A stretch of 55,840 nt of DNA, counting the filler, from Dugesia japonica (lineage: Eukaryota), in assembly GCA_001938525.1 (NCBI GenBank). It is 5 parts of 5 records of this genome, joined end to end, with 100 filler letters (N's around TTAATTAATTAA, not from the genome) between each part and the next. Parts side by side here need not be neighbours in the genome. Positions count along the whole stretch, not along the records: positions 10,452 to 22,288 come from MQRL01634838.1; 4 more parts are not named here. The stretch is one strand, 5' to 3'. Below, in pieces: positions 600-20,568 of the stretch (position 1 is the first letter of the stretch; each line of letters begins with the position of its first letter). Below the pieces are notes generated by a model. The model did not search any database, had not been told where the DNA came from, and saw only the letters and a program-made list of their open reading frames with translations. Position numbers and translations under genes: made by a program.

Positions 600-1588
600 A
601 TTATCAGACATGTTTGGAATTCAAAGTTCTAAAGATACTTTCGAAGAACTAGACAAGAGAGAAATCGAAATTCAAATTGAAGCAGTGTTATGTCAAACAA
701 ATAAAAAGAAATAGAACGGATAATTCTAACGATAGGTTTCGTATAAATTGATATAATGTTATAATAATACCAGTAACATGAATGAACGATTTTTAAAAAA
801 TGACCCTCTTTATAATGATATATTCTATTTTGATCCAAATAATTTCCCACAAATTTCAAGTAGTAATATACCTCGTCTCATTTTTGAACCTTTATTCAAT
901 TTAATAAATGAAAAATTGAATAAAAATATTGCGAAGGAAATTTTGAAAGCTGAACTAATGGATTTTCAAAAAAAGTGGAAAAGTTTTAATGGTACTTTAG
1001 CAGAAGATAGAAGTGAATTGTTTTGTTATGAAGAAGATGATGAAGAGATTAATACAGTAAGATCATGCAAATCATGCAAAAATCGTATTGTATGCTGTTA
1101 TACAGTTTTACAAAAATTTCATCTGGATACACTAGCATACTCAAATTTATTTTTAGCGTACAAATTTGTTATTACTTTATCATCAACACAAGTATCTTGT
1201 GGGAGATCTTTTTCAAAGTTAAAATATATTTTAAATCGACTCAGAAATTGTTTAAATCAAAAACACTTGGAAGCATTTATGCTCATGGCGTGTGAAAAAA
1301 TATTCTAAATAACATTGACATAATAGAGTAATTGATATAATGAGAGAAAAAAGTGAAATATTAACAAAACTTGTTTAATTAGTAATATTTATTTAATTAT
1401 TTTTAATTACTTAATTTTAATTTTTGATTTTTGTTGCAATTATTAAAAAAAACTCTTTTTTATTATTTTAATAAATATGTTTATAAATTACTAATGTACT
1501 TTTTTGAAATTTTTTTTTCTCAAATTTACTATTGTGGGCCTACGTCACCGATATTTCCCGGGTCTAAATGTGTTTCCAGTCCAGCCCT
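600..1588 (+). mobile_element. hAT DNA transposon remnant: 3' part of a ZMYM1-like transposase (ORF 778-1308) plus the right terminus
   Basis: ORF ends with STQVSCGRSFSKLKYILNRLRNCLNQKHLEAFMLMACEK, the hAT C-terminal dimerisation motif (ERSFSxLK...LR). Frameshifted upstream residues (DRFRIN*YNVII) fit the same family. GC-richer terminus ends ...CCAGTCCAGCCCTG at 1588 (CAGGG on the - strand). Left end not seen. Confidence 0.8.
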
Positions 1589-1859
1589 GATAATCAATAA
1601 ACATTTGTGGAGAGTTGTGAGATTTTGAATTTAACTAATAATTCGTATTAAAAACGTAATAATAAAAGTAAAATACTTTCCACTTTGAACACATATTTAA
1701 TATAAAAACAAAAAATATAAAAAAGATCACCCCGATATTGTATAGATTTATATTTGTTATATAAAATATTAAACGCTCAAAAAAATATTGATTTATATAA
1801 TAAAAGTAAATTTTATGTTTTTGATTAAATGTACTAATATCATTTTTTATCATCTAAGT

Positions 1860-2155
1860 CAAGGGTGCACAACATACGGCGCGCGGTACGAATGCGGCCC
1901 TCAACTATGTTGCATGCGGCCCGGGACCCAAGTCCATGACAAATGCATAATGTATATTTTTAAAGAAATATAATTCTATACAACCCACTAGGTGCAAAAT
2001 GACACTTTAACCGTGCTATATTAAATTTTTGAATTATATATAACCTATAATATCAGTGATGCATAATCTTAGGCCCGAAAATTTTACATGCATGCCCGCG
2101 ACATTGATTTAAACTGATGATGTGGCTCGTTTAGAAAAACCATTGTGCACCCTTA
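1860..2155. mobile_element. hAT-type MITE (~296 bp)
   Basis: TIRs CAAGGGTGCACAA (1860) / TTGTGCACCCTTA (2143-2155, 1 mismatch). 8-bp TSD ATCTAAGT / ATCTAAGC (7/8). Confidence 0.85.
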
Positions 2156-2839
2156 ATCTAAGCCATATGAACACTTTATAGTAAGTGTTTCTAGCTGATT
2201 CATACTTGAAGATAATAAAACCATATAAGCAAAATATACAGTATTAAAATAATGTTTTAGAAAGAAATTGAGAATTACAGCGTGGAGAATAATACAGCAC
2301 AAAGAAAACATACGTTTGACTGTATAAATAAAGTTTTCATATAATTGTATAATTAAAATAATCCATTTTTGATGCGTGTTATAGACAAGTGCGCCCTATA
2401 AACGGAAAAAATACAAAGTATTTGTTTTTTGTCGATTTTCATGATTTCCACTTATGGAGTGCGCGCACACTAAGTGAAGTAACACGTTAGCATGGACATC
2501 AAGCGATAATCATCATCTCAGTATTCCTCATTATAATTTCAATCATTATTATCAATTATTTATATCATTATAATATGAAGAAAAATATTTTACTATTCTG
2601 ATCCTTAGTAAAATATTACTATGATTCTACAAGAAAATGACAATATAAATAAATAAAAAATTTCTGCATGATTTTACGATTGCAATTTTCTTTCGTCAAT
2701 TTTGACGTTTCTAATAATGGGCTATCATTTCAGATTTTTTTTAGATTACAGCTATTTCATCCTAATTAATATTTGTTTCAGTCGATATAATATTTTATTG
2801 AGTCGATTTAATATTTTTTTCATTCAATTTAATATTTCA

Positions 2840-3199
2840 GAGTTTAATATCAATGTTTCTATGTCTACGGTTAATAGGGCCATAGGCAAGTTTAATTACA
2901 GTGTTAAGAGAACCCATCTCATCCCAGAGAGGCGTAATATATCGGCAACTCTGACTTTAAGGAAAACTTATGCTCAAGGATTCAATAATTTTGTGACCGA
3001 CATAAATACTGCATACAACTTTTATTTCATAGATGAAGTTGGATTCAATCTTTCTATGAGGACTCGCAGAGGTCGATCTCAAATATGGCAGCGAGCTAAT
3101 CATATAGAATCTGCTCTGAGATCACAAAATATATATTGTAGACACATGCTTAGCTATATCCCCAAATGTTTGAATGAAACACCTCTTGAAAATGGTTAA
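2840..3199 (+). mobile_element. Tc1/IS630-like (DDE_3) transposase fragment
   Basis: NVSMSTVNRAIGKFNYSVKR (HTH recognition helix) followed by FYFIDEVGFNLSMRTRRGRS (first catalytic Asp, FIDExGF motif). Rest of the DDE domain absent. Confidence 0.75.
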
Positions 3200-5207
3200 T
3201 AAATTCTTAAACTAATATCTTACTTTTTATTTTCTGTGTTTGATGTATTTTAAAGCATTTTGTAAATAAATTTTTCAAAATTTTTCTTGACTATTAAATT
3301 GAATGAATAAAATATTAAATTGAATGAAATAATCAAGTTCAATATCGCAGTGATTATAATTTTATTGTTGTTTGTCTTTCATTCTCTTTAGAACAACTGA
3401 TGCTCCACTAATGTTCATACACACTGGTTAATATGTATTTGCTTGCTTTTGTGTAGGATGCTAACCTTATACTCATATATTATATACATTTTCTATATTT
3501 TACAGGTGCCTCCTGATAACAACATGTCTACTACCTTTGTTCGTAATGCTGCTTCTGCAAAATCATTCTTAAACCCGCATTGGTCCTATCACAAATTGAA
3601 ATCACTGAATTGAAACTTTTTCAAAAAATAAAATAATAATATTTTTGATTTAAAATAATAATTTTGAAAGCCAATATTTCTGGACATTACATATAATTAA
3701 AGGAATAATAAATGTCTCCAAATAAATACATTAATAAAAAATATCAATTTTTAACCCAAAATTNTCTGGGCTTTCTTACATTTAACTTCCTTTCAACAAT
3801 ATTTTCTTAATTTTTCTGAATAATAATATTTATTACCTTAATAATAATTTAATACAATTTAATTTAATGTAATACTTATCTACAATAATAAAATTTTTTA
3901 TTTTTGACTTTACTTTAATTAATACATTAATAATATAATTTTACAATAATAGTTATAATAATAATTAACATAAATTAACATTTATGAATTTTACTACTTC
4001 CTTATTACTTTTATTCTAATAACATTAATCTCACTTTTTATAAAAATAATTTTTCCTTTTAATGTAATTATGTAACTTTTGTTATAATCTTACTCTCTAC
4101 ATAATTTACTTTAATATAATCCTCTTTTATTATTTATCTACATTTATAAAGTATTTAACCAGTAAATTATTTAAAGTATTTTATTCCAGTCTAGCTTTCA
4201 AGTTTCATTTTTGTTTTAATTATCATTTTCGATTTTTTATTGAATTCCTTCCTTTTACTTGTAATTTGTCGTTTTAATTTCATTTTAATTGATTTATTCA
4301 AATAATAATTCTGTTCATCATCACACTTTATTGCTTTTATTCTTTTCTTTAATTTATTTCTTTTATAATTTTCATATTTTCTATTTTATTTATTCAATTC
4401 TTTTTATTTTCGCATTGAACATATAATCCATTTCTTTTATTTCTGTGTGATATTGTATTATTAATTCTTTCTTTAATTTTCTCTTGAGCATTATTTTAGT
4501 TGACGATTAATTTACTTATTTCTTTTGATTTTCTGAGAATCTCTGCACTTTTACTTTCTTTTGATTTTCTTTAAATATTCTATTTTCGTATTCGCATTAT
4601 CCATTTAACCATTAGTTTTGCAAACTTTTACCTTCGTGGTTGTTCTAGCCCAACAAAACATTAACTGCAAGCAAATTATCGCATAATGCTTTATACCATG
4701 TTGAACGTAAAAAAACTTTTGTCTATATTAGTAGATCAAATTCTTTAAAACATGGAGCTCAATCTAAGTGATCTCTATGAAGTTAAAACATCAGTTGTGA
4801 ATCACGATTTTCAAACAACAATGAAATTATTGTTATTAAATAAATGTGATTTATTTTCAATGTAAACGTAATCTGAAAATGGTTTTTCTATTAATCCATT
4901 TTTTGTTAATTCATTTAACTCGATTTTTACCTAGCCCTGATTTAAACGTCCATTTATGAAAATTATGTTGTTATATAATTACTATCTTACCAATTCTTAT
5001 CTTAAACCGTTATTTTTAAGGGTTATTAATAAATATTTCATTCCTCTCATCAAAATATTAAAAATTTTCGACTGTGGAATATTAATACTTAAATTAAAAC
5101 GATACTTAAATGATTCGTTTTAGTGCTCTGAATATTTAACTAAAGCAATATTTTCAACTGATAAAACTCAATCATATTAATGAACAATGCATAAGTTTCG
5201 TTTATAT

Positions 5208-5508
5208 CAGTAGTAAACAATTAGTAAACAATTAGTGTGTCACGACAAGTATCCTGATGTATCACGAAAAATTTTTAAAAATTAAAAAATACTGTTCGCA
5301 ACGCCAAGCCATACATCACATTGATTTTTAATCTTACATAAAGAAAAAGATTTTATTTTTAAGCTTTTTGTCATACCGTATGTTTTTCTAACTTTTTTAA
5401 TAAAAATTTTAATAAATCTTTATTGTACCGCTTTAAATTCCGTAAAAATAAATTGGTGTCGCGAAAATACTTTACATAGGTGTGTCGCGACTTGAAGTTT
5501 AAACACTG
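5208..5508. mobile_element. Degenerate hAT-type MITE
   Basis: Starts CAGT..., ends ...AAACACTG. Internal GTGTCGCGA/GTGTCACGA subterminal motifs. 8-bp TSD GTTTATAT / GTTTAAAT (7/8). Confidence 0.6.
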
Positions 5509-5931
5509 GTTTAAATAATTGATTTATTAGCAATATAAAATGTAAAAACATTTATTAAATGTTTATAGTAATGTAACAATATGGTAAAAACATTAACAAT
5601 ATTTTTAAAATTATCAGTGTTAACACAAAAATTTGTCTGAATAAAAATCGGAAAGCAATTTATCCAAATTTGTTACAAATTAAAACGAAAATGAATTGAA
5701 AACGTTTTATACCACAATTTTTGAATTTTCAAATTCTCGAAACCAATAATTTTAACTATAACTAAATTATGTAAGATATTTTCCAGTATTAAAATACAAA
5801 AAACTATAAATAATTTTTGTTTATTGTTTTAATACTTTTTCAGTGATAACTAAAATAACTAGCAATTCTTAACTTCTCGAAATAGTTTTTAGCAAATAAG
5901 AATAATATCAAAGGGCAATTAGATAAGTTAA

Positions 5932-6826
5932 TTAATTTTGATATTCATTTAGAATAGATGTTAATCTTTTAGATATTGAGTCTGCTTTTAAAATTCCATT
6001 ACTTTCATTTTCCAATTGTGTAGCGAATTTCATCAAATGAGATTCCAAATATTTTCGATTTTTTTTTGGTTTTGTGTTATCACTTCTGTTTCGTCGATTT
6101 GCAAACCACGAGTTAACCTAAATCAAATAATTAAACATTGATTAAAATCTAAAATAATAACTTGTGCGACTGATATTAATCCCTGAAAGGCTAGTGTTTC
6201 TTTTTGTTTGTTATTTGGATATGGATAGTCAACATGTTTCAGATACCATTTTTCCATTATTTTCACAGCCTTTTTATTTAGTGGTTTATTTCTGTAGTTA
6301 GTTATATCATTTTTTTTCCTATCCCTTCTTATGGATTTCGAATAGATTTCTTCAGAATTAGAGAGAACTTCGTATGGAGTGCAAGCTTGTATATTATTAT
6401 TAACTGATCTTGAGTATTTTTGGAGAAGATTTTCGTTTAGTTTATCTTCTTTCGAAAATTCCAAATCAGAAAATAGTTTATCGTCTAAATTTAACACAGT
6501 ATCCTTTGATGGTTTATTGGGTTCTTCAACAAATAAATGAGAGAATACATCGTTGCAATTTAATTCTGAATGTCTTGATGTAATTATAGAAAAATTATTT
6601 TCAAATTTTTCATTCCAAAATGTGTTTTCATCATGTTCATTTGTTTTGAGTAATGTTTCAAAATTAACTCTTAATAACAAAATTAATTTATAATTTTAAG
6701 ATACATTTTAATTAACTCATACTTTTCGTCATTAATATTAATTTCTGGATAATTATTATTTAAAATATATTCTTCTAAAGGCAAATCAAATATCGAATCA
6801 GCAATAAACGACCCACTTGAATACAT
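5932..6826 (-). CDS. TALE-class homeobox transcription factor (~265 aa), divergent and spiralian-TALE-like; 3 exons
   Basis: Exons 6826-6723, 6669-6162 and 6117-5932, with GT-AG introns of 53 and 44 nt. Spliced homeodomain RNKPLNKKAVKIMEKWYLKHVDYPYPNNKQKETLAFQGLISVAQ|VNSWFANRRNR has the TALE PYP loop and WFxN helix 3. The intron sits at the classic helix-3 Q|V position. Stop TAA at 5934-5932. Confidence 0.92.
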
Positions 6827-8559
6827 TTGAATTTAATTGTCTTTGTTTAAAAATAACCAATGAAATTTAATATAATACACACAATTATATTGGTTTTAAA
6901 AAGTCCAGATCATGTATAAAATAATCCGATTTACAATAATCAATTTGGTGCTGTATTACAGTTTTGGAAATTCATAACTTTAAAGAAATAATATTTTCGG
7001 TCTTTTAAAGTTGTTATTTTAAACCTTAACATCTGTAGGTTTTCCATGTATAATAACAAGTAATTCATATTTATGAAACCAATTTGTTATTATTAAGCAC
7101 TGTCTCATCTTATTTAGGTAATACTATTTGGCATTAGTTTCCTAATTTAAATTAAAATGTAACCTTAGGCATATTATTAATGATTTCATGTTGGCATATA
7201 AATTCATCAAATAACAATTTCATATTAGCAAGTAACTATTATCGAATAATAGTTTCATGTCTACGTAATAAATTCATGAAATATCAATTCCATATCCAAT
7301 TTCGGGAACAAAGAATACTGAAAAGATTAACATCCAATAATTATCTTAAAAAAATTTAAACCTTTTTCTTTCAATTGAAATTATTGAAAAATATATTTTT
7401 TTATTTTTCACAAATATTTATAAAACTTATGACTTTGAGAACTCCTTACCTAGTTTAGTTCTGTATACTTTATTTTTTGGTGTACAAATTGCAAAATTTT
7501 CACACCTTGTTTTTTTCATTCCTTTATGATTGTTCCGTCGCTTATTTTTGTTGATCCATTTACAACTTATTTTGTAGTGTGTTTTCATAAGTTTCATGCC
7601 ATAAATTTTTGTATNNNNNNNNNNNNNNNNNNTATCAATTGCTTTTTTTCGTTTAGAATAGAGGTTCTCAAAGTCAAGATAGCGAAAAAAACATTTTGAG
7701 ACTGTATGAAACTTTCAAATTGTCTCTGATTTTAATCATAAATTTATTATGTATTAATTTTTTTGTCTTATAAAGAGAAAGTCATATTTTCCTATGATAT
7801 TAGGGATCATACAAATTTTAAAGTCAAGACAAAATATTTTTAAGTAGACATGTAAAGATATTAATAAACAGCATATATAAGTCCTTAGCCAACATGTTAA
7901 AATTATAAAAATATGTTCATTCTGTCAAGGAAAATATATGGATCAAATGATTTCGTTAGTTAAAATTAGTTATTAAATAATGTTTTATAAATATTTTTCT
8001 CTATAATTTTTAAATTTTGAAATTCATTAATTTATTTAGTCTAATTTACGATTTTCTTTTAAATTTAATAAAATTACTGGAGTCTAAGCCTTTGTAAATA
8101 AAATAAGTAAATACGGTACTCCTAAGTAATCATTTAAATTACCTTAAGATCTACGTAAACTAGTGTTGATAAATCTGAATTTAAGATTAAGAAATAATTA
8201 AATATTTTTGAGTTTTATAGTAGCGGTTCGAGATTACTAAAAGAAGTAATTTTAAAGTTTTATAATAGCAAATCAATATTATGATATAAAATTCATCAAC
8301 TTCAAAAATTTATTGACTAAGATATTAAGTCTACAACTTCAACACAAAAAATGAAACTGTTCTAAGTTAGTCGAATATCTGACCTATATAGTATTAAATT
8401 ACGATTAATATATGAAGCATGAAGTCAGTTAGTAATAATACTGTATTCTGATGATAAAATCCTAGTAGTAAATGATTCCAATGTGAAGTCTAAGAATATA
8501 ATAGTAGATTTTAGAAACGCATCATTCGATGAATATATAAATTATAGACATTCTGTTGA

Positions 8560-12075: not shown

Positions 12076-12192
12076 TTTTTATTAAATAAAATTTTAATTA
12101 TAATTTATATTAATAAAAGTGTTTCTATTAATAATTATATATTAGTATAATTATAAATTTATAAAACGAAATATTATCACAATTAAAGTTAC

Positions 12193-15100
12193 TTTTCATT
12201 TATCAGATGATTTTCAAAGATCAAATGAATAATATCAGAAAATGCAGCAGATAAACCAAATCCAGAAATCGTAATTCCAAATATTATTCCTCTATTTTTA
12301 TTAAAACACTAAATGGAAATATTGTTAATTTAAAAAATTACATTAATATTCAATACGAGATTGGATTATTTATATTAATTATGAACGGAAATTCTCAATA
12401 AGAACTATTATTTGTAATGGGAAATACGATAATTATTAAAACTAATTGATATACGATTTTTGAGTAAACATCAAATAATATGAATAAAGGGCTTGGTGAC
12501 ATTTAATCACTCGACAATTAATCACTTACAAATGCAATATAATAAAATAAGCATTAATGTATATTATCAATTAAGTAATTAATCATTGTTCCTTAATTTA
12601 TACACTGAAAGTAATTCACATATATTTAACTAGTAAAATTTAATCACATGTATTAAATTTAAATGTACACATTTAAAGAACTAAAATTAATGAACATAAC
12701 AAGTAAAAGTGTCTGTTTTGTATAATCAATATGAATTAATCAAGAATTTGAAATATGCCAATGGTAATATTCAATGAGGTTAGCAGTTCAGAAAATTTTA
12801 AGCCCGTTTAACTAAACAAAAAATGATAAAATCTTTGGTATTTGTGATCATCAGCATATTTATGGTGTTAATAAACCTACTGTTTTGACCAAACAAGCTT
12901 TTGCAAAAATTAGGCAAATTGGATTGACTTAAACATCCACAGTGATAGGTTATGTTATTATGCAGCCTCATTGGAATCTTCCTTTAGCTTTACCCAAAAA
13001 GAAATCACTAGTTTGCAGCGAAATCACCAAAATATATAGTTTGAGTAAGGATCTAGATTTCTTCTTTCGACTACAAAAAATTTGATATTCAATATACCAG
13101 ACGAATTTCAACATATGAGTAGATAGATACTAGAGTCCTGACAAAGCACTTATTTGTTATCCCCCCACCTCGTGACTTAGTGAAATTTAATCCTAATGCA
13201 TTTAGTTGGGAATTTTAAAAAATGATATCATATGTGGTAATATTAGGTAATCGGATTAACTGTGTCTATATTTCCCAGTGTATTTAGTTGGGAAATGTTT
13301 TTGAACACAAATTATGTTATGAGATTAATTTCATCGGTGAAACTTCATATAATAAGATTAACTGTGTCTAAATTTTTTAAGCTTTTTAAGCAGTAGAATT
13401 ATTTAGGCTTTTTAGTTGAGAATTTATTCGATGTGGTCGAATAAGGTAAATTTTTGGTTGGTTTAGGTGGATTTGGTTGATAACTTGCTCGGTGACGTCG
13501 AATCTGAGCAAACTTGGATGGTTCTAGGTTAATTTGGTCAACTATTTCATCTGAAATAGTTAATTTGTGTAATTTTTATGTGATTTAGTCGACGATTTCC
13601 TCGGTGAGGTTGAATCTGAGGAAACTTGATCAGTTTTAGGTTAATTTGGTCAAATATTTCCTATAGAATGGTTAATTTGCGTAATTTTTTGGGCAATTCG
13701 GTCAAATTTTTCCTCCGGGTTAGTCAGTTTGAGTAATGTTTATGTGATTCAATAAATTTTTCAGCAATCTGGTTGAATTTGGCTCATTTTTGGGAAATCT
13801 GGTTGAAATTTTTTCTCGAGATTGCTCGGTTTGAGATTTTTTTGGATGATTAAGGTGAATTTGGTTAAACATTTTCGTGATGAGGTCGAATATTGTCAAT
13901 TTTTTAATGGTTTAGACCCATTTTTATGTAATTTGGTCGAATATTTCCTCGGGAATTGAAATTTTGGGTAACTTTTGGATGAATTGGTTGAATTTTGCTT
14001 GGGTATTGTTTAATTTTCTTCTTTTGTGGGAGATTTGGATGAAGTTTTCTTCGGGAATAGCCAATTTGGGCCAATTTGGTCAATTATTTACTCGGTTTAG
14101 ATAATATTAATCAATTATTTTCTCGGTATTGACAAACTTGGTTAATTATTTGCTCGCAAGGGTAATTTTTAGGTACTATTGATCAAATATTTATTTGGTA
14201 AGTATCAGTTTGAGTAATTTTATGACGATTCGGTCAATTATTTCCTCGGTTTTAGTCAATTTGGTTCAGATTTGAACGATTTGGTAAATTAATTATTCAC
14301 AGTGGTCAGATTTTGGTTGAAAATGTTCAGAGATTGGCTGACAGTTCTCAGACTTTGGTTGAAAGTGCTTAGATTTTAGATGATTCGGTCAATTATTTTC
14401 TTATAATGGATAAACTTAGTAAATAATTTACTCACGGATGTCGATTTGAATGGTTTTCAGCTGGCTATAGTCAATAACTTACTCACCAGGGTAATATTTA
14501 GGTGAATTCGGTCAATTATTTTCTCGGATTTGCTTAATTTGGGTTGAATTTTTATGGACATTCATGTGAAAAGTCGAATTTGTATAAATTTTCCATTTTT
14601 ATAAGATAATTTAATATTTTTTTGTGGTAAATTTCTGGTAAAATGGGGGGAATTATATTTGTTTGAATTTTCAAATTTTTGAAAATTTTATATCAAAATT
14701 TTTATGGAAATCCAAAATTTCCTAAATTCATAGAAAATATCAGATTACATTGAAGAAAATTTTGACAGTCAAAACGAAACATAGATGTATAATACTGATG
14801 ATGAATCTTTATGGATAGAAAAATAATATAATGAGTCTAGGTTTAATTTATTGGAGATAAGCTTCTATTAAGCTTCAAGATAAGCCTCTATTAATAATTT
14901 ATGGTTTATTTTATTAGAAAAAAGATTAAATTCATTAGAATTTGAGATCAATATGGTTTCAACATGAAAATAATAGGTTTATCCTGTGATAAAGATGTCT
15001 TTCTCTCAATAAATTCCTTCACTTTTTACCTTCATACTTGCTTGTTTCCCGATTCCTTGCTTGCTCATTGGTTTATAATTGTAATATAAAATTAAATAAA

Positions 15101-17811
15101 CATTTTCTCGGTTAACTGATGCAAAGCATTATGATAAATCTATTTTTAAAACTTAAAAATCATTTTTTTAACCATTAATCTGTCAATAAATAAATTTGTA
15201 TTTAACAACAAAAAAATTGTTTAAAAAAAATTTTAACATACAAAAATAAAAGTTGCTGTTCTTCTTTTTTCAAAATTTCGGCATAGCCTGCTTCTTAAAA
15301 GAAATTATAAAATAGATTTATCATAATGCTTTACAGCAATTAACTGAGAAAATGTTTATTTAATTTTATATTACAATTATAAACCAATGAAAATTGATTT
15401 TACTCAGATTTATTTGAAATCTGTCTTTATGTCAAAGTTTGTAATAAAAGTTTACTAAAAAATAGTTCCTGAAAAAGGCAATGCTGAAATATTGAAAATA
15501 GAAGAACAGTAACTTGTATTTTTGTATGTTAAAGTTATTTTTAATAAAAATGTTATTTTGTTTAAAACAAATTTTTTTATTAACAAATCAATGGTTAAAA
15601 ATTAATTTTTAAGTTTTAAAAAATTTTTAAAATAGATTTATCATTGTGAATAGGTTAGAGGCAGTTAAAATTTTTTGTGCTCTGGTTAAAAATTGTGTTT
15701 TAAAAATTTTTATTTATAAAAAAATCAAAATCACAAATTAATCAAGAAATTAAAATAAATTGAAATTTTTGAAAATGTCAATTTTGTTTTGAAAGTACAG
15801 AAAATTTTAAAATGATAATTTAATAGCAAATGATATTGTTAAGAAAATTTTATGAAAATTTCAGAAAATATAATTACAAATGATCATTTTTTTGTTTTGA
15901 AATTTTATGAAATTTTTTTAACAAATGATCAGTTTTTTTAAAAATTTTTTAAATTATATTTTAATACGTAAATAGTATTCCATATCATTTGCATTTGTAA
16001 AAGTTGCCCTAAGGTACTTATTGCAGGACTATCAAAATGGAACAGTATTCGGTCTGGTGAAACCAGTGAAATCATCCATTTTACTATACTTATAATATAA
16101 TCATTAACAAATATTTTCGTTTAAACTAGACAGTAAATTGCAGTATGATTTATACCTGAAACAAATAGAAAAGATATGATAACAATTGAAGAAATAAAAA
16201 ACACTTGTTTTAGTTTCGAGGGATTATATCTCCGTATACTGGATGAAGAACATTGAGTAGAAGATATTAAAAATTAAAAAGGAATTTGTTTAATAAATTA
16301 CTTTTTTAAAGCACACCATTATTTGCGGAATGAAATTTATAAATGTGTCTTATAATTATTTACGTGATCATAAGTGATTTAATACAAATTGCGGTTGTTG
16401 TTACCAATGTATCCATAGAATTCACACTTCCCAAAATTAAGCAGAACGGCACACTACAATAATTAAGTAGTTACTGGGGAATACCCTTATTCAAAAACTA
16501 TTATCTAAACATTTTTATGACATTTACTTAATATTTTTAGGTCGATTCAGTCAAAATTTTTCATCGTTTAGGTCGAATCTGGTTAATTTTANTCGATCTT
16601 AGGTAAATTTGGTTGACTATTTACTCGGTTATTTATTGATTATTTACTCAAGTCGATTTTTGGCTAGTTTGGATAAGTTTTAGGTGATAATTTACTCAGG
16701 CTGGTCGAAATTGCTTCATTTTTGGTGATGTTTTGGTAAAATTAATTGATAATATAATCAGACAAAGTTGATTTTTAGGTAAATTATGAAGATAATTTAC
16801 TCGGTAAGATCGAATCTGGACATTATTAATCAGTTTTAGGATATTTTGGACGATAATTTGCTATTTGAGGTTGAATAAGATCTATTATGGGTAGTTTGGG
16901 GTAATCTTTGGATAATTTTCGTCAATTATTTAATCACAAGGATCAGTTTTAAGTAAATTTGAATGATAAATTTCTCGGCCTTGTCAGTTTGGTTTAAATT
17001 TTCATGAGAAGTCTAATTTGTTTAAAAATTCAAGTTTTTAAAGGTTTTCCATGGGAGGTTTTGTGGAAATTTGTATAAACAGCCCATGTTATTTAAATAA
17101 ACACTAAAAACCAATATTTTGAAAACAAATTTAATAAAATTAATTTTCAATTGCAAAGATCAAAACGATGTTTTTCTATTTTCATAGAGTTCAATATTTC
17201 GGCTNTGCCTTCTTCAGGAACTATAAAACTGTCTCAAAAATTTATGTAAATTTAACAAAAAAAATTAATTTTTCATTAACTTAATTGAATAAGACAAAGA
17301 AAATAATATTCTAAATAACTTTTGCTGCAGCACTCAAAGCAACTCCATAAGCGATTCCAACTCCAAATCCACCGAAAAGCCCAAATGATATGATAACAAG
17401 TGATAAATATGATTTTAGAGTAAAATACATCAATCCAAAATTTAAACTAAAATATTTCGTTTAAATTTCAATTTCTAAAATCAATTCGTTTCCACCTCAT
17501 AAACCACGAACCAATCAAAATCGTTATAAACGTCCCAAATTTCAATTCAAGATATCCACCAAGTGACAAAGCAGCACCAGTTCCCAATGATATTGCTCCA
17601 AATATCCATTCTGTATTTATCTCATTCACTGAATTTCGAGAATAACTGTTATTTTTCATGTAATTAATAATATCATTTTGAAAATTTCCTAAGGAAAATA
17701 ACTTTCTTAAAGAACTTTAAAAATTTTACCAGCTGTATACAAATGTCCAAGAGTTAATTCAATTAGAAAAGCTCCCAATACAACAAAATATTTATTATGA
17801 AACTTTATCAT
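12193..17811 (-). CDS. MFS transporter (oxalate:formate antiporter / monocarboxylate-transporter-like), 5' part only; 4 exons
   Basis: Exons 17811-17730, 17688-17496, 17446-17320 and 12308-12193, with GT-AG introns of 41 nt, 49 nt and ~5 kb. Spliced: MIKFHNKYFVVLGAFLIELTLGHLYTAGNF...SLGGYLELKFG...FGLFGGFGVGIAYGVALSAAAK|CFNKNRGIIFGITISGFGLSAA..., typical TM1-TM5 of OFA-family MFS proteins. Later exons not identified. Confidence 0.85.
13250..14650. repeat. Degenerate G/T-skewed minisatellite block inside MFS intron 3
   Basis: Recurrent TTGGTCAATTATTT(T/C)CTCGG-like subunits. ~112-bp higher-order copies at ~13491 and ~13603. A related block lies at 16540-17070. Confidence 0.7.
15066..15645. repeat. 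Hammerhead-bearing ~320-bp repeat (family B): inverted copy abutting a terminally redundant forward copy
   Basis: 15066-15146 is the reverse complement of 15309-15389, and ~15135-15295 of ~15465-15645. AAAATAGATTTATCAT recurs at 15309 and 15629 (period 320). Decayed hammerhead at 15462-15500 (+): CTGAAAA-a-GGC-aat-GCT-GAAA-ta-TT^gaa. Confidence 0.7.
16540..17070. repeat. Second block of the G/T-skewed degenerate minisatellite
   Basis: Same subunits (TTGGTTGACTATTTACTCGG, TCGAATCTGG). Ends with a tail (GAGAAGTCTAATTTG...) similar to that of the 13250-14650 block (GAAAAGTCGAATTTG...). Confidence 0.6.
17185..17225 (-). ncRNA. Minimal type I hammerhead ribozyme, family B, apparently intact
   Basis: Minus strand: tatagttc-CTGAAGA-a-GGC-aNa-GCC-GAAA-ta-TT^gaactcta. 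All core nucleotides are present, stem I pairs 7/8, stem II is 3 GC pairs, stem III is palindromic (ATAT). Predicted cleavage between 17193 and 17192. Confidence 0.8.
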
Positions 17812-18159
17812 GTTTTTAAAATATTTATCGAAATTAATTAACTCTAAATAAAACTATTGAATAACCAAATTTCTTTACCCGAGCAATTATACAAGATCTA
17901 TTTGACATTTTTTAAAAAATAGAAAAAAAGTTAACAAAATATGAACTTAATAATTTTCTTTTTGTTCTTCTTTATTTAACTTAAATAAAATTTTACAAAT
18001 CTGGAAATTTATTTTATTAAATCTTTTGAAAAAAAGTTTTAAAAATTTAGATTGAAGTAGTATAGTAAAACAACGAAATAGTACAAATTAATTGAAAAGT
18101 TGAGTTATTAAGTCTATAAAATGTTTTTGTATATAAAATTTGAATATGATTTCAAAGAA

Positions 18160-19075
18160 ATTGATAGCTTCTAATCTCTTTGTCTTCTCTTTAGCAAATG
18201 TTTTCATTACTTTGGTCTTCTGACAAATTTCATAACTACGAATTATCTTCTGCATTTAGGTCCACGAATTCTTCGCAATCTATTTGTTTCTAATATATTC
18301 TTAAACCTTTTCAAATCCTGCATGATGTAATAATTTATGTATTTTGTCTATTGTCTCATGTATTTTATCATCAGAAATTTATATTTTCTTGATTAAATAT
18401 GTTTCATCAAAAATGCTTAATTGTTTTTCTTTTTATATTATGTTCAGTATTCTTGTTTTAATCTTCTCTTTCTTGGCATCTTCATGTGACATTTGAAATT
18501 GCACATATACCTCACAACTTGGTCTAGATAACATATCTGCATTAGCGTGTTGAATTCCTTTCCTATATTCCAAAACCATGTCTGGACTACTCAGATAATT
18601 AATCCATGTCTGAAATTGTGAAGTAATTGATTTCTTTGTCATCATCATAAAAGTTTAGAGCTTTATGATCTGTTCTAATATTAAATCTCATACTGTACAA
18701 GTAATGTTTGAAATGAATCCAGAAATAATAAACAGCCAATAATTCCTTTCGTGTTATGCAATATCCTTTTTAATGACTAGTCATTGAGTGTGATACATTG
18801 GCAATAATTCTTTCTTTTCCTTCTTTATACTGCTTCAATTTTATCAAAACTGCCATTTGTATTTAATATCAATTCTCTATTTATGTTAGGAAAACACAAT
18901 ATTGGTGCAATCATTAGAGATTTCTTAAGACCCTCAAAAGTATCTTTTAATTCATCTCTTCATTCTAATTTCTTCTCGATTGGTCCACTGCACAACTACT
19001 CTAAGATCCTTGATTTTCTTGCGCAGTTTTCTATAAATTTCGTGTATTAATTACAAATTCTTCAGAAAGAAACTT
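18160..19075 (-). mobile_element. Ty3/Gypsy pol relic (RT connection and RNase H), pseudogenised
   Basis: YCITRKELLAVYYFWIHFKHYLYSMRFNIRTDHKAL ... WINYLSSPDMVLEYRKGIQHANADMLSR are Gypsy RNase H motifs. Frameshifts and stops present. Confidence 0.9.
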
Positions 19076-19084
19076 TTTTTGAGA

Positions 19085-20430
19085 AGACTTTATATTTATG
19101 TATGATATTGGGCAATCTGGATATTTTGCATGGGGAGTCTATATTTTCATGGTATTGGGATGTCTATATTTTGCATGGCATGGATGAGACTTTAAGATGA
19201 GGGGAATATCTATATTTTGAATGGTGTGAAGAGACTCTATATTTAGCATGGAATGGGCAGTATAAAATTCAAAGGTACGTGATTTTCAGTGTATATTTGT
19301 TGCATCTGAATTACATACCTATTGCATTTTTTTAAAAATATTCAAAATGGCGGCTATGTTGATTTTTTAAAAATTTCTTTTTGGTGGGAAATTTTAAGAA
19401 AATTTTTTAAAAATTCCCAGGCGTGTGATTTTTAGTGTATATGTGTTGAATCTGAGTTGCATCTGAGTTGCATACATTTTGCATTTATTAAAAATTTATT
19501 AAAAAAATCAATAACAACCAATGGAAATTTTAGGCACGCGCTGCTGTATTGTATTCATTATGCATTCATTATTAAAAAACATTGGGTAGTCATTATATTT
19601 TGTATTATACTGGGCAGTCTTGAAATAACTGCAAGATATTGGGCAGTCTTTATTAGTTCCGGCAGTCTAAAATTTAATTAACATTATAAAATATATCTAT
19701 AAAAAAAAATTTTTGTGATATTTATATGAAATATAACTATCAAGAAACTTCAAAGAGAGGAATCTTTGTGACATTTACACGATAAAATATTCAAATAAAA
19801 ACTTTTCTTTACAAGATGATATAAAGCAGAAATTTTTTCAAAAAAAACATATAGTTAGGTAATTTTCTTTAAAAAAACATATAAGTCATGCAGTGTGCCT
19901 ATAAAAAATATATTAGTCATGAAATATTTCTATAAAAAACATATACGTGTTGCAATTTTTTATAAAAATCTCATTAGTAATGCAATTTTTAGTAAAAAAT
20001 CTTATTAGCTGAGAACATTTCTTTACAATAGGTTAAAAACATAGAATTCTTTTCATAAAGATCATAAATTCAATATATAACTATTAAGCCTATATAAAAA
20101 TTTATAAGAAAATAATTTTATGATTGTATAGGATTAATGAGTGTATTATTTGTATAGTTACCTTGTATTATTTACATAGAAACCATGTATTATAGGGTTT
20201 ATTAGTGTATTATTTGTATAGTTACCCTGTATTATTTACATAGAAACCATGTATTATAGGGTTTATTAATGTATTATTTAAATAGGAACCATGTATTATA
20301 AGGTTTATGAGTATATTATTTGCATAGTTACCTTGTATTATTTACATAGCAACCATGTAATATTTACATAGTAGCAGTGTATCATAGGGTTTTAGAGATT
20401 ATTATCTACATATTAACCTTGTAATATGAG
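19085..20430. repeat. Composite minisatellite tract
   Basis: Consecutive arrays: ~21-bp TATATTTTGCATGG units (19085-19265), a duplicated CGTGATTTT(C/T)AGTGTATAT block, GGGCAGTCTT units (19610-19670), ~30-bp AAAAAACATATA..TCATGCA units (19830-20040), and ~21-bp TGTATTATTT(G/A)(C/T)ATAG units (20140-20420). Confidence 0.7.
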
Positions 20431-20568
20431 ATCACCATGCAAAATGTATGTTTATAAAATTAGTTATCAAAAATTAATTTAATCAAAATATTGTTTTGTG
20501 TTACTTAGTATTATAAAAAAATAAACCTTATTATTAATTTCTTATTAAATAAATAAAAATAAACTAAT

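What the first reader, a model, noticed from the sequence alone, without database searches (positions are those of the whole stretch)
17185..17225. Apparently intact hammerhead ribozyme in the sense strand of an MFS transporter intron
Seen: complete core (CUGAAGA, GAAA, UU^), 3-bp GC stem II, 7/8-bp stem I and palindromic stem III, on the same strand as the MFS pre-mRNA and about 95-135 nt downstream of the exon 3 donor (17319). The same intron has a decayed sense copy (~15255-15300) and an antisense copy (15462-15500) that could pair with it. Established: minimal hammerheads are weak as monomers and activated by dimerisation, and intronic hammerheads are known in animals. Inference: it could cleave the pre-mRNA or affect splicing. 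It is the best-preserved copy here, reflecting either recent insertion or selection. The single N falls in loop II.
Basis: partly seen in the sequence, partly recalled or inferred. Interest (0 to 1): 0.75.

Follow-up and report, generated by a model that had tools for sequence, protein, structure and literature searches.

The report
Retroelement-type minimal hammerhead relic in intron
The 41-base hammerhead ribozyme motif is really there and looks intact, but it belongs to a many-copy mobile-element repeat of a known kind (Penelope-like "minimal" hammerheads), and nothing shows that it cuts or regulates the host gene's RNA.

Summary
Observation confirmed. On the minus strand, 17225-17185 holds a complete type I hammerhead: helix I 7/8 bp, CUGAAGA, an unpaired A, a 3-bp G-C helix II, GAAA, a palindromic AUAU helix III and U17, with the cut site at 17193/17192. 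My descriptor expects 0.0003-0.003 such motifs by chance in this piece.

Spliced reads confirm that it lies 94-134 nt inside a 5,011-nt GT-AG intron (12309-17319) of an expressed minus-strand gene.

It is not a single-copy host element. Region 17104-17224 is one copy of a dispersed repeat, with two more copies in the same intron and read depth about 55 against under 1 in neighbouring intron.

The unpaired base between A9 and G10.1, the G10.1-C11.1 pair, the palindromic helix III and the head-to-head copies on opposite strands are the published hallmarks of Penelope-like-element (PLE) minimal hammerheads. Metagenome contigs carry the same core with covarying helix I beside a GIY-YIG open reading frame (ORF).

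No RNA ends pile up at the predicted site. Family RNAs in the hammerhead sense spanning 17185-17188, 4-7 nt from the cut site, persist in polyA RNA, and the intron is spliced.

Verdict: a solo relic of a known retroelement ribozyme class, most likely inactive as a monomer. A role in the host gene is unsupported.

The parts
17185..17225 (-). Complete minimal type I hammerhead motif. Helix I 17225-17218 with 17192-17185. CUGAAGA 17217-17211. Unpaired A 17210. Helix II hairpin 17209-17201. GAAA 17200-17197. Palindromic AUAU 17197-17194. U17 at 17193. Predicted cut 17193/17192.
   Evidence: Sequence. Only descriptor hit in the piece. Chance expectation 0.0003-0.003. Isolated 41-mer folds into helices I and II. 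35.2 bits against a model built only from PLE-linked metagenomic hammerheads.
17104..17224 (-). Copy A of the dispersed repeat that carries the hammerhead at its 5' end.
   Evidence: Profile match 17223-17104, E=2e-24, though A is part of the profile. A-B local alignment scores 60 against shuffles of 28 +/- 4. RNA read depth about 55 here against under 1 in flanking intron; indel variants at 17161, 17185 and 17188; loose ends at 17135 and 17224.
15454..15640 (+). Copy B of the repeat, antisense to the gene. The hammerhead has G8 changed to A and C11.1 changed to U (a G-U wobble), and a 9-nt gap removes the helix I 3' strand.
   Evidence: (I3); 21.3 bits.
15065..15310 (-). Copy C of the repeat, sense to the gene. 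Helix II, GAAA and the body are kept. The CUGA box is absent, so the copy is either decayed or 5'-truncated near helix II. Its head faces copy B, 161 nt away.
   Evidence: (I2); 23.4 bits.
15309..15390 (+). 82-nt inverted fragment of the repeat's tail. It is 95% complementary to 15065-15146 and lies 8 nt from the head of copy C, giving a head-to-head, 5'-truncated inverted partner.
   Evidence: (I1).
12309..17319 (-). 5,011-nt GT-AG intron that holds all three copies.
   Evidence: Spliced reads and a contig join 12308 to 17320 in X22, X23 and X7 (table 5).
17320..17446 (-). Further exons are 17496-17687 and 17729-17897, separated by introns of 49 and 41 nt. The downstream exon ends at 12308.
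   Evidence: Joints 17446/17496 and contig record 7. Open frames. Weak MFS/Nodulin-like signals.

Best explanation
The motif is the ribozyme of a short non-autonomous retroelement repeat. That repeat is either derived from the flanking repeat (pLTR) of a Penelope-like element (PLE) or mobilised by such elements, and one copy landed in this intron in the sense orientation.

In an active element of this class, two neighbouring copies, or a copy helped by the element's own protein, form a double hammerhead through the self-complementary helix III and process multimeric element transcripts.

Here the copy stands alone. Its helix III is a single base pair, it has no loop-loop tertiary contact, and the only nearby same-strand copy has no catalytic box and a different helix I. 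It is therefore expected to be essentially inactive in the pre-mRNA and to be removed with the intron.

Shown: the anatomy, the repeat nature, the intron, expression of the gene and of the family, and the existence of the same ribozyme variant beside PLE genes elsewhere.

Inferred: the PLE ancestry of this family, and its inactivity.
For: (1) All core positions are present, with G10.1-C11.1, A15.1-U16.1 and U17.

These are an unpaired base between 9 and 10.1, a palindromic helix III, and paired copies on opposite strands 100-700 bp apart. Copies B and C are head to head, 161 nt apart. An 82-nt inverted tail fragment lies 8 nt from the head of C.

(3) It is a repeat. There are three copies in the piece. 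Read depth is about 55 on both strands in stranded polyA libraries, against under 1 nearby, and summed contig depth is 1,285-7,074.

(4) By parsimony over copies A, B and C, each core change is private to one copy, so their common ancestor had the intact core, helix II and palindrome.

(5) A pattern scan of metagenome contigs, with helix I and the two helix III bases left free, found AT-flanked loci (L003, L005 twice, L012, L019 twice) with the same core. Their helix I covaries (UUUC/GAAA against CACC/GGUG), and the helix III dinucleotide stays palindromic (CG, AU, UA). On the 8-sequence alignment, 82.9% of cells pair against 74% in shuffles (1 of 500 reach it), and covariation is 0.288 against 0.157 (1 of 500); slid controls give 0.04-0.12.

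(6) L005 has a GIY-YIG ORF (Pfam E=3.2e-5, above the cut-off) between its two hammerheads, plus PLE-like ORF pieces.

(7) A covariance model built only from those loci scores A at 35.2 bits, C at 23.4 and B at 21.3. The best unrelated site scores 15.3.

(8) No cleavage signature is seen, and the intron is spliced. PLE hammerheads are reported as near-inactive as monomers (PMC4209133) and as leaving no RNA-seq ends even in an active element (PMC11167929).
Against: - Rfam's hammerhead models give no hit even at E<=10 on 161 nt. They also miss the PLE-linked control loci L003 and L012.
- Helix II has 3 bp, against the 6-8 bp described for PLE minimal hammerheads. The PLE-linked relatives found here have 3-4 bp.
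- There is no PLE protein remnant anywhere in the piece, so the PLE link rests on resemblance.
- The metagenome loci were fetched with a pattern taken from this motif, so their core similarity and the model score are partly circular.
- Only copy A has a convincing helix I in the window.
- One read-derived variant group has G8 and helix II changed (table 7), so much of the family is decayed.
- I could not see the rest of the genome's copies.
Confidence: 0.7

Rival explanations
1. Chance look-alike. An AT-rich repeat with no ribozyme history happens to contain CUGAAGA, a short G-C hairpin and GAAA, and copy A happens to have complementary flanks.
For: The chance rate of 0.0003-0.003 per 11.5 kb still gives tens to hundreds of sites in a large genome, and the scan reads very many windows. 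Rfam gives no hit. Copies B and C lack a full core or helix I. Helix I of A depends on 9 nt that B and C lack.
Against: Features outside the descriptor all agree with the PLE class: the extra base, G-C at 10.1-11.1, the palindrome, and the head-to-head pairs. The core is ancestral to the three copies. The same variant sits beside a GIY-YIG ORF with covarying helix I in other organisms.
Confidence: 0.17
2. Monomer of a retrozyme-type element, that is, a small tandem repeat expressed as circular RNA, rather than a PLE flanking repeat.
For: The repeat unit is about 245 nt (hammerhead, body and 82-nt tail). This falls within the 150-450 nt given for animal retrozymes. The family is low in GC and abundantly transcribed (PMC7229834).
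Against: There is no tandem arrangement in the window. There are no loop 1/loop 2 contacts or canonical helix sizes. A 2026 preprint reports retrozymes as depleted from introns and as PLE derivatives anyway.
Confidence: 0.08
3. Host-adopted intronic ribozyme. The sense copy cleaves the nascent transcript of the transporter gene, or modulates its splicing, as proposed for the conserved intronic hammerheads of amniotes.
For: Sense orientation, 94 nt from the donor, with every core position intact. The local fold forms in a 41-111 nt context.
Against: It is a multi-copy repeat rather than a conserved single-copy element. It needs a matching partner, and none exists nearby. The intron is spliced and the mRNA is present. 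No pile-up of ends is seen, and in X7 unique intron contigs downstream of the motif have depths (2.6-10.6) similar to those of the exons (6.5-8.3). Pairing with the antisense copy is far more stable than the ribozyme fold.
Confidence: 0.04

Closest known systems
Minimal hammerheads of Penelope-like elements (Cervera and De la Pena 2014, PMC4209133)
   Same: Type I topology. Unpaired base between A9 and G10.1. G10.1-C11.1 pair. Helix III reduced to a palindrome that works only between two copies. Short helix I. No loop-loop contacts. Many dispersed and mostly solo copies. Pairs on opposite strands 100-700 bp apart. AT-rich insertion sites.
   Different: Helix II has 3 bp instead of 6-8. No PLE reading frame is nearby. 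The carrier is a repeat of about 245 nt, not a recognisable pLTR-ORF-pLTR unit.
Animal non-LTR retrozymes with type I hammerheads (PMC7229834)
   Same: Low-GC short repeat carrying a type I hammerhead with a weak palindromic helix III. The repeat is strongly transcribed.
   Different: It is not in tandem, it has no canonical loops 1 and 2, and circular RNA was not examined.
Conserved intronic hammerheads of amniotes (Rfam HH9 and HH10; named from my own knowledge and the mention in PMC7229834)
   Same: A hammerhead in the sense strand of an intron.
   Different: Those are single-copy, deeply conserved, stable monomeric ribozymes with tertiary contacts. This one is a minimal, repeat-borne motif with no Rfam match.
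Hammerheads with an extra core nucleotide, such as the chrysanthemum chlorotic mottle viroid plus-strand ribozyme (De la Pena and Flores 2001, cited in PMC4209133)
   Same: One extra base between A9 and G10.1 is tolerated.
   Different: That ribozyme belongs to a viroid, has type III topology and is stable as a monomer.

Membership tests
Hammerhead ribozyme, type I | Core C3 U4 G5 A6 N7 G8 A9 and G12 A13 A14 | tested here: met
   CUGAAGA at 17217-17211 and GAA at 17200-17198.
Hammerhead ribozyme, type I | A15.1-U16.1 pair and a non-G base 17 before the cut | tested here: met
   A 17197, U 17194, U 17193. All eight aligned relatives have UU here.
Hammerhead ribozyme, type I | Three helices around the core | tested here: inconclusive
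   Helix I is 7/8 with 5 contiguous pairs, and helix II is 3 G-C pairs. These form in the minimum-energy fold of 41-111 nt but not of 221 nt. Helix III is 1 bp and needs a second copy.
Hammerhead ribozyme, type I | Match to Rfam hammerhead covariance models | tested here: not met
   No hammerhead family at E<=10 on the piece or on 161 nt. The same is true of the PLE-linked controls L003 and L012, so the test is insensitive for this class.
Hammerhead ribozyme, type I | Self-cleavage at the predicted bond | not testable with these tools
   RNA reads show no pile-up of ends (table 6), but locus-specific depth is near zero and standard libraries rarely capture such ends.
PLE minimal hammerhead | [quoted passage not shown] | tested here: met
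   A at 17210. The feature is listed in PMC4209133.
PLE minimal hammerhead | Palindromic 15.2-16.2 or loop 3 | tested here: met
   AUAU here; ACGU and AAUU in relatives. The pair at columns 36-37 has three pair types.
PLE minimal hammerhead | Long helix II (6-8 bp) | tested here: not met
   3 bp here, and 3-4 bp in L003, L005 and L012.
PLE minimal hammerhead | Lies in the flanking repeat of an element with RT and GIY-YIG genes | tested here: not met
   No PLE protein similarity in the piece. The feature is met in the relative L005, with GIY-YIG at E=3.2e-5.
PLE minimal hammerhead | Many copies per genome forming families with compensatory changes | tested here: inconclusive
   Three copies in the window and high read depth. 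Covariation is seen only across loci of other organisms. The genome itself could not be searched.
Animal non-LTR retrozyme | Head-to-tail tandem units of 150-450 bp, each with a hammerhead | tested here: not met
   No tandem copies of this unit.
Conserved intronic hammerheads (HH9, HH10) | Single-copy, monomer-stable ribozyme matching those Rfam models | tested here: not met
   It is multi-copy and has no Rfam match.

The most novel reading that the evidence does not exclude
The sense copy has been taken over by the host. In the nascent transcript it cleaves at 17193/17192, perhaps helped by a PLE protein or by another family RNA acting in trans as the dimer partner. This would set the level of the transporter mRNA, and the antisense copy 1.7 kb downstream would act as an off-switch by pairing with the motif.
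Probability: 0.04. Interest if true: 0.6.

Novelty: new member of a known kind. Interest (0 to 1): 0.27.

Why it matters
It adds one more genome, and a short-helix-II variant, to the known spread of retroelement-borne minimal hammerheads. It also shows that the same core variant occurs beside Penelope-like genes in unrelated environmental eukaryote contigs. It does not open a new question. The practical point is that an intact-looking hammerhead in an intron should first be tested for being a repeat copy before any role in the host gene is proposed.

Tried and rejected
- Rfam cmscan at E<=10 on the piece and on 161 nt gave no hammerhead. It also missed the control loci, so this counts only weakly against.
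- A viral-contig scan and the first, stricter metagenome scan gave 0 hits.
- Most of the 22 hits of the looser scan are GC-rich bacterial coding look-alikes and were set aside.
- The word search with the 82-aa exon frame found no candidates because of the length window.
- Pfam on single exons gave only a sub-threshold Nodulin-like hit.
- Strand folding refuses N. Folding was done in a script with the N left as N. The N was never filled or looked up.
- tblastn of the L005 PLE frames against the piece found nothing.
- The 15.3-bit model hit at 19027-19073 (-) has no helix II or helix I and lies in a retrotransposon frame, so I treat it as chance.
- No target-site duplication was found around 15065-15390 (by eye).
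- The organism is coded in the run table. I did not pursue its name, beyond noting weak hints (very short introns, about 24% GC, Atlas taxa).
- Complex prediction, structure prediction and the large protein search were not needed.

Full report
**What is there**

On the minus strand the stretch 17225-17185 has, in order:
- 8 nt of the helix I 5' strand
- CUGAAGA
- one unpaired A
- GGC, a 3-nt loop (holding the masked N at 17205), then GCC
- GAAA
- UA
- UU
- 8 nt that pair with the first 8 at 7 positions, five of them contiguous next to the core

There is an extra base between A9 and G10.1. 'Stem III' is only A15.1-U16.1, and the four bases AUAU are self-complementary.

**More than chance?**

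A descriptor written to allow these peculiarities finds only this site in the piece. In 3,000 simulated sequences per Markov order it occurs 0.002-0.003 times per piece with helix I at 6/8 or better, and 0.0003-0.001 times at 7/8. That is significant for one window, but not for a genome-wide scan, so other evidence is needed.

In isolation, and in 71-111 nt of context, the minimum-energy fold contains helices I and II. In 221 nt it does not.

**The setting**

Spliced reads and a contig from three runs join 12308 to 17320. The skipped ends read CT..AC on the plus strand, which is a 5,011-nt GT-AG intron on the minus strand. Two further introns of 49 and 41 nt lie just upstream. The gene is expressed and the library is stranded: exon depth is about 8-15 in one direction and under 1 in the other.

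The motif is therefore in the sense strand, 94-134 nt into the intron. The MFS assignment rests only on a sub-threshold Nodulin-like Pfam hit and on Atlas feature hits to Nodulin-like and MFS_1 clusters. I did not build the joined protein.

**It is a repeat copy**

Copy A aligns over about 100-120 nt with 15454-15640 (+) (copy B) and with 15310-15065 (-) (copy C). Similarity starts at the first base of helix I.
- B has G8 changed to A and a G-U at 10.1-11.1, and it lacks 9 nt that form the helix I 3' strand in A.
- C keeps helix II, GAAA and the body but has no CUGA box. It is either decayed or 5'-truncated at about that point.

B and C lie head to head, 161 nt apart. An 82-nt inverted piece of the repeat's tail (15309-15390, 95% complementary to 15065-15146) lies 8 nt from the head of C.

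Each core change is private to one copy, so the ancestor of the three had the intact core, helix II and palindrome.

In stranded polyA RNA libraries, depth over 17135-17224 is about 55, on both strands. Most reads are 90-95% alike and align only in part. There are indel variants at 17161, 17185 and 17188. Neighbouring unique intron has depth under 1. Summed contig depth in X7 is 1,285-7,074 here, against 3-10 for unique intron and exons. The family is therefore many-copy and transcribed in both orientations, probably as a passenger in other transcripts.

**What kind of element**

PMC4209133 describes the minimal hammerheads of Penelope-like elements (PLEs). They are type I, have an unpaired base between 9 and 10.1, keep G10.1-C11.1, and reduce helix III to a palindrome that can act only as a dimer. 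They are mostly solo and widely dispersed, sometimes in pairs on opposite strands 100-700 bp apart, and are barely active in vitro. The window motif meets all of these features except the long helix II.

I then scanned metagenome contigs with a pattern taken from the motif, leaving helix I and the two inner helix III bases free. Most of the 22 hits are GC-rich coding look-alikes. L003, L005 (two sites), L012 and L019 (a head-to-head pair) have AT-rich flanks and the same architecture. Their helix I covaries (UUUC/GAAA against CACC/GGUG), and the inner helix III bases are always self-complementary.

On the 8-sequence alignment:

| Measure | Observed | Shuffled mean | Shuffles reaching the observed value |
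|---|---|---|---|
| Cells paired | 82.9% | 74% | 1 of 500 |
| Covariation score | 0.288 | 0.157 | 1 of 500 |

Structures slid by 1-3 columns give covariation scores of 0.04-0.12.

In L005 a GIY-YIG ORF (E=3.2e-5, above Pfam's cut-off) lies between the two hammerheads, with further ORF pieces that look PLE-like by eye. An Atlas lead points to animal, mostly rotifer, clusters.

A covariance model built only from these outside loci scores A at 35.2 bits, C at 23.4 and B at 21.3, with the best unrelated site at 15.3. This is partly circular, because the loci were fetched with a pattern from A. Even so, helix I, the palindrome and the PLE genes were not part of the pattern.

The piece itself has no PLE protein remnant.

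Rfam finds no hammerhead here, but it also misses L003 and L012.

**Does it act on the host RNA?**

Nothing says so.
- No position in 12100-18000 shows a pile-up of molecule ends.
- Hammerhead-sense family reads spanning 17185-17188, 4-7 nt from the predicted cut site, are present in polyA RNA.
- The intron is spliced.
- In X7, unique intron contigs downstream of the motif are about as deep as the exons. X7 may contain DNA, so this last point is inconclusive.

A double hammerhead needs a partner with matching helix I and III strands. Copy C does not have them. Copy B is antisense: on the same pre-mRNA its complement can pair with A at a predicted -52 kcal/mol, against -9.4 for the local fold, which would mask the ribozyme.

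PMC11167929 reports that an active PLE hammerhead cleaved only with the element's protein and left no RNA-seq ends.

**Verdict**

The motif is best read as a solo, recently inserted or simply well-kept copy of a known class of retroelement ribozyme (confidence about 0.7). Chance resemblance remains possible (about 0.17), a retrozyme origin less so (about 0.08), and a host function is unlikely (about 0.04).

It is a new member of a known kind, and interest is modest.

The masked N was left as N throughout.

Noticed in passing
window 18436-18959 (-): Remnants of a Ty3/gypsy-type retrotransposon polyprotein, just upstream of the gene's first visible exon. Pfam RT_RNaseH scores E=9e-10 at 18602-18769, and RT_RNaseH_2 scores E=4e-4 at 18828-18959. 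The remnants are split over several frames by stops and shifts.
   Followed up: partly
window 13400-14600 and 16536-16975 (+): Degenerate arrays of about 51/112-nt units (the TTTAGGT..AATTTGGTCAA type) fill much of the intron. Reads that are 90-95% alike cover them deeply on both strands, with summed contig depth up to 2,263, and show many internal rearrangement joints. This is a second abundant repeat family. No ribozyme boxes were found in it.
   Followed up: partly
window 17447-17495 and 17688-17728 (-): Two confirmed introns of only 49 and 41 nt lie next to the 5,011-nt intron. This is a strongly bimodal intron size within one gene.
   Followed up: no
window 17347-17454: The 2026 RNA runs X22 and X23 carry about eight near-fixed differences from the window in exon 3, while X7 matches the window. 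The cause is either a divergent lineage under the same species label or a paralogue.
   Followed up: no
L005 758-804, 1455-2009, 2667-2709, 5434-6279: A 257-kb metagenome contig (WLWD01000564.1) carries Penelope-like element pieces: two same-strand minimal hammerheads 1.9 kb apart, with a thumb-like frame and a GIY-YIG frame between them. A frame resembling a PLE N-terminal domain lies further on. The second hammerhead sits about 50 nt before an ATG.
   Followed up: partly
L019 2795-2838 (-) and 3205-3248 (+): Two identical minimal hammerheads lie head to head about 370 nt apart with identical flanks. This is the same arrangement as copies C and B in the window.
   Followed up: no
window 20100-20450 (+): A tandem array with alternating 42- and 22-nt spacing (64-nt period, about 9 registers).
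   Followed up: no
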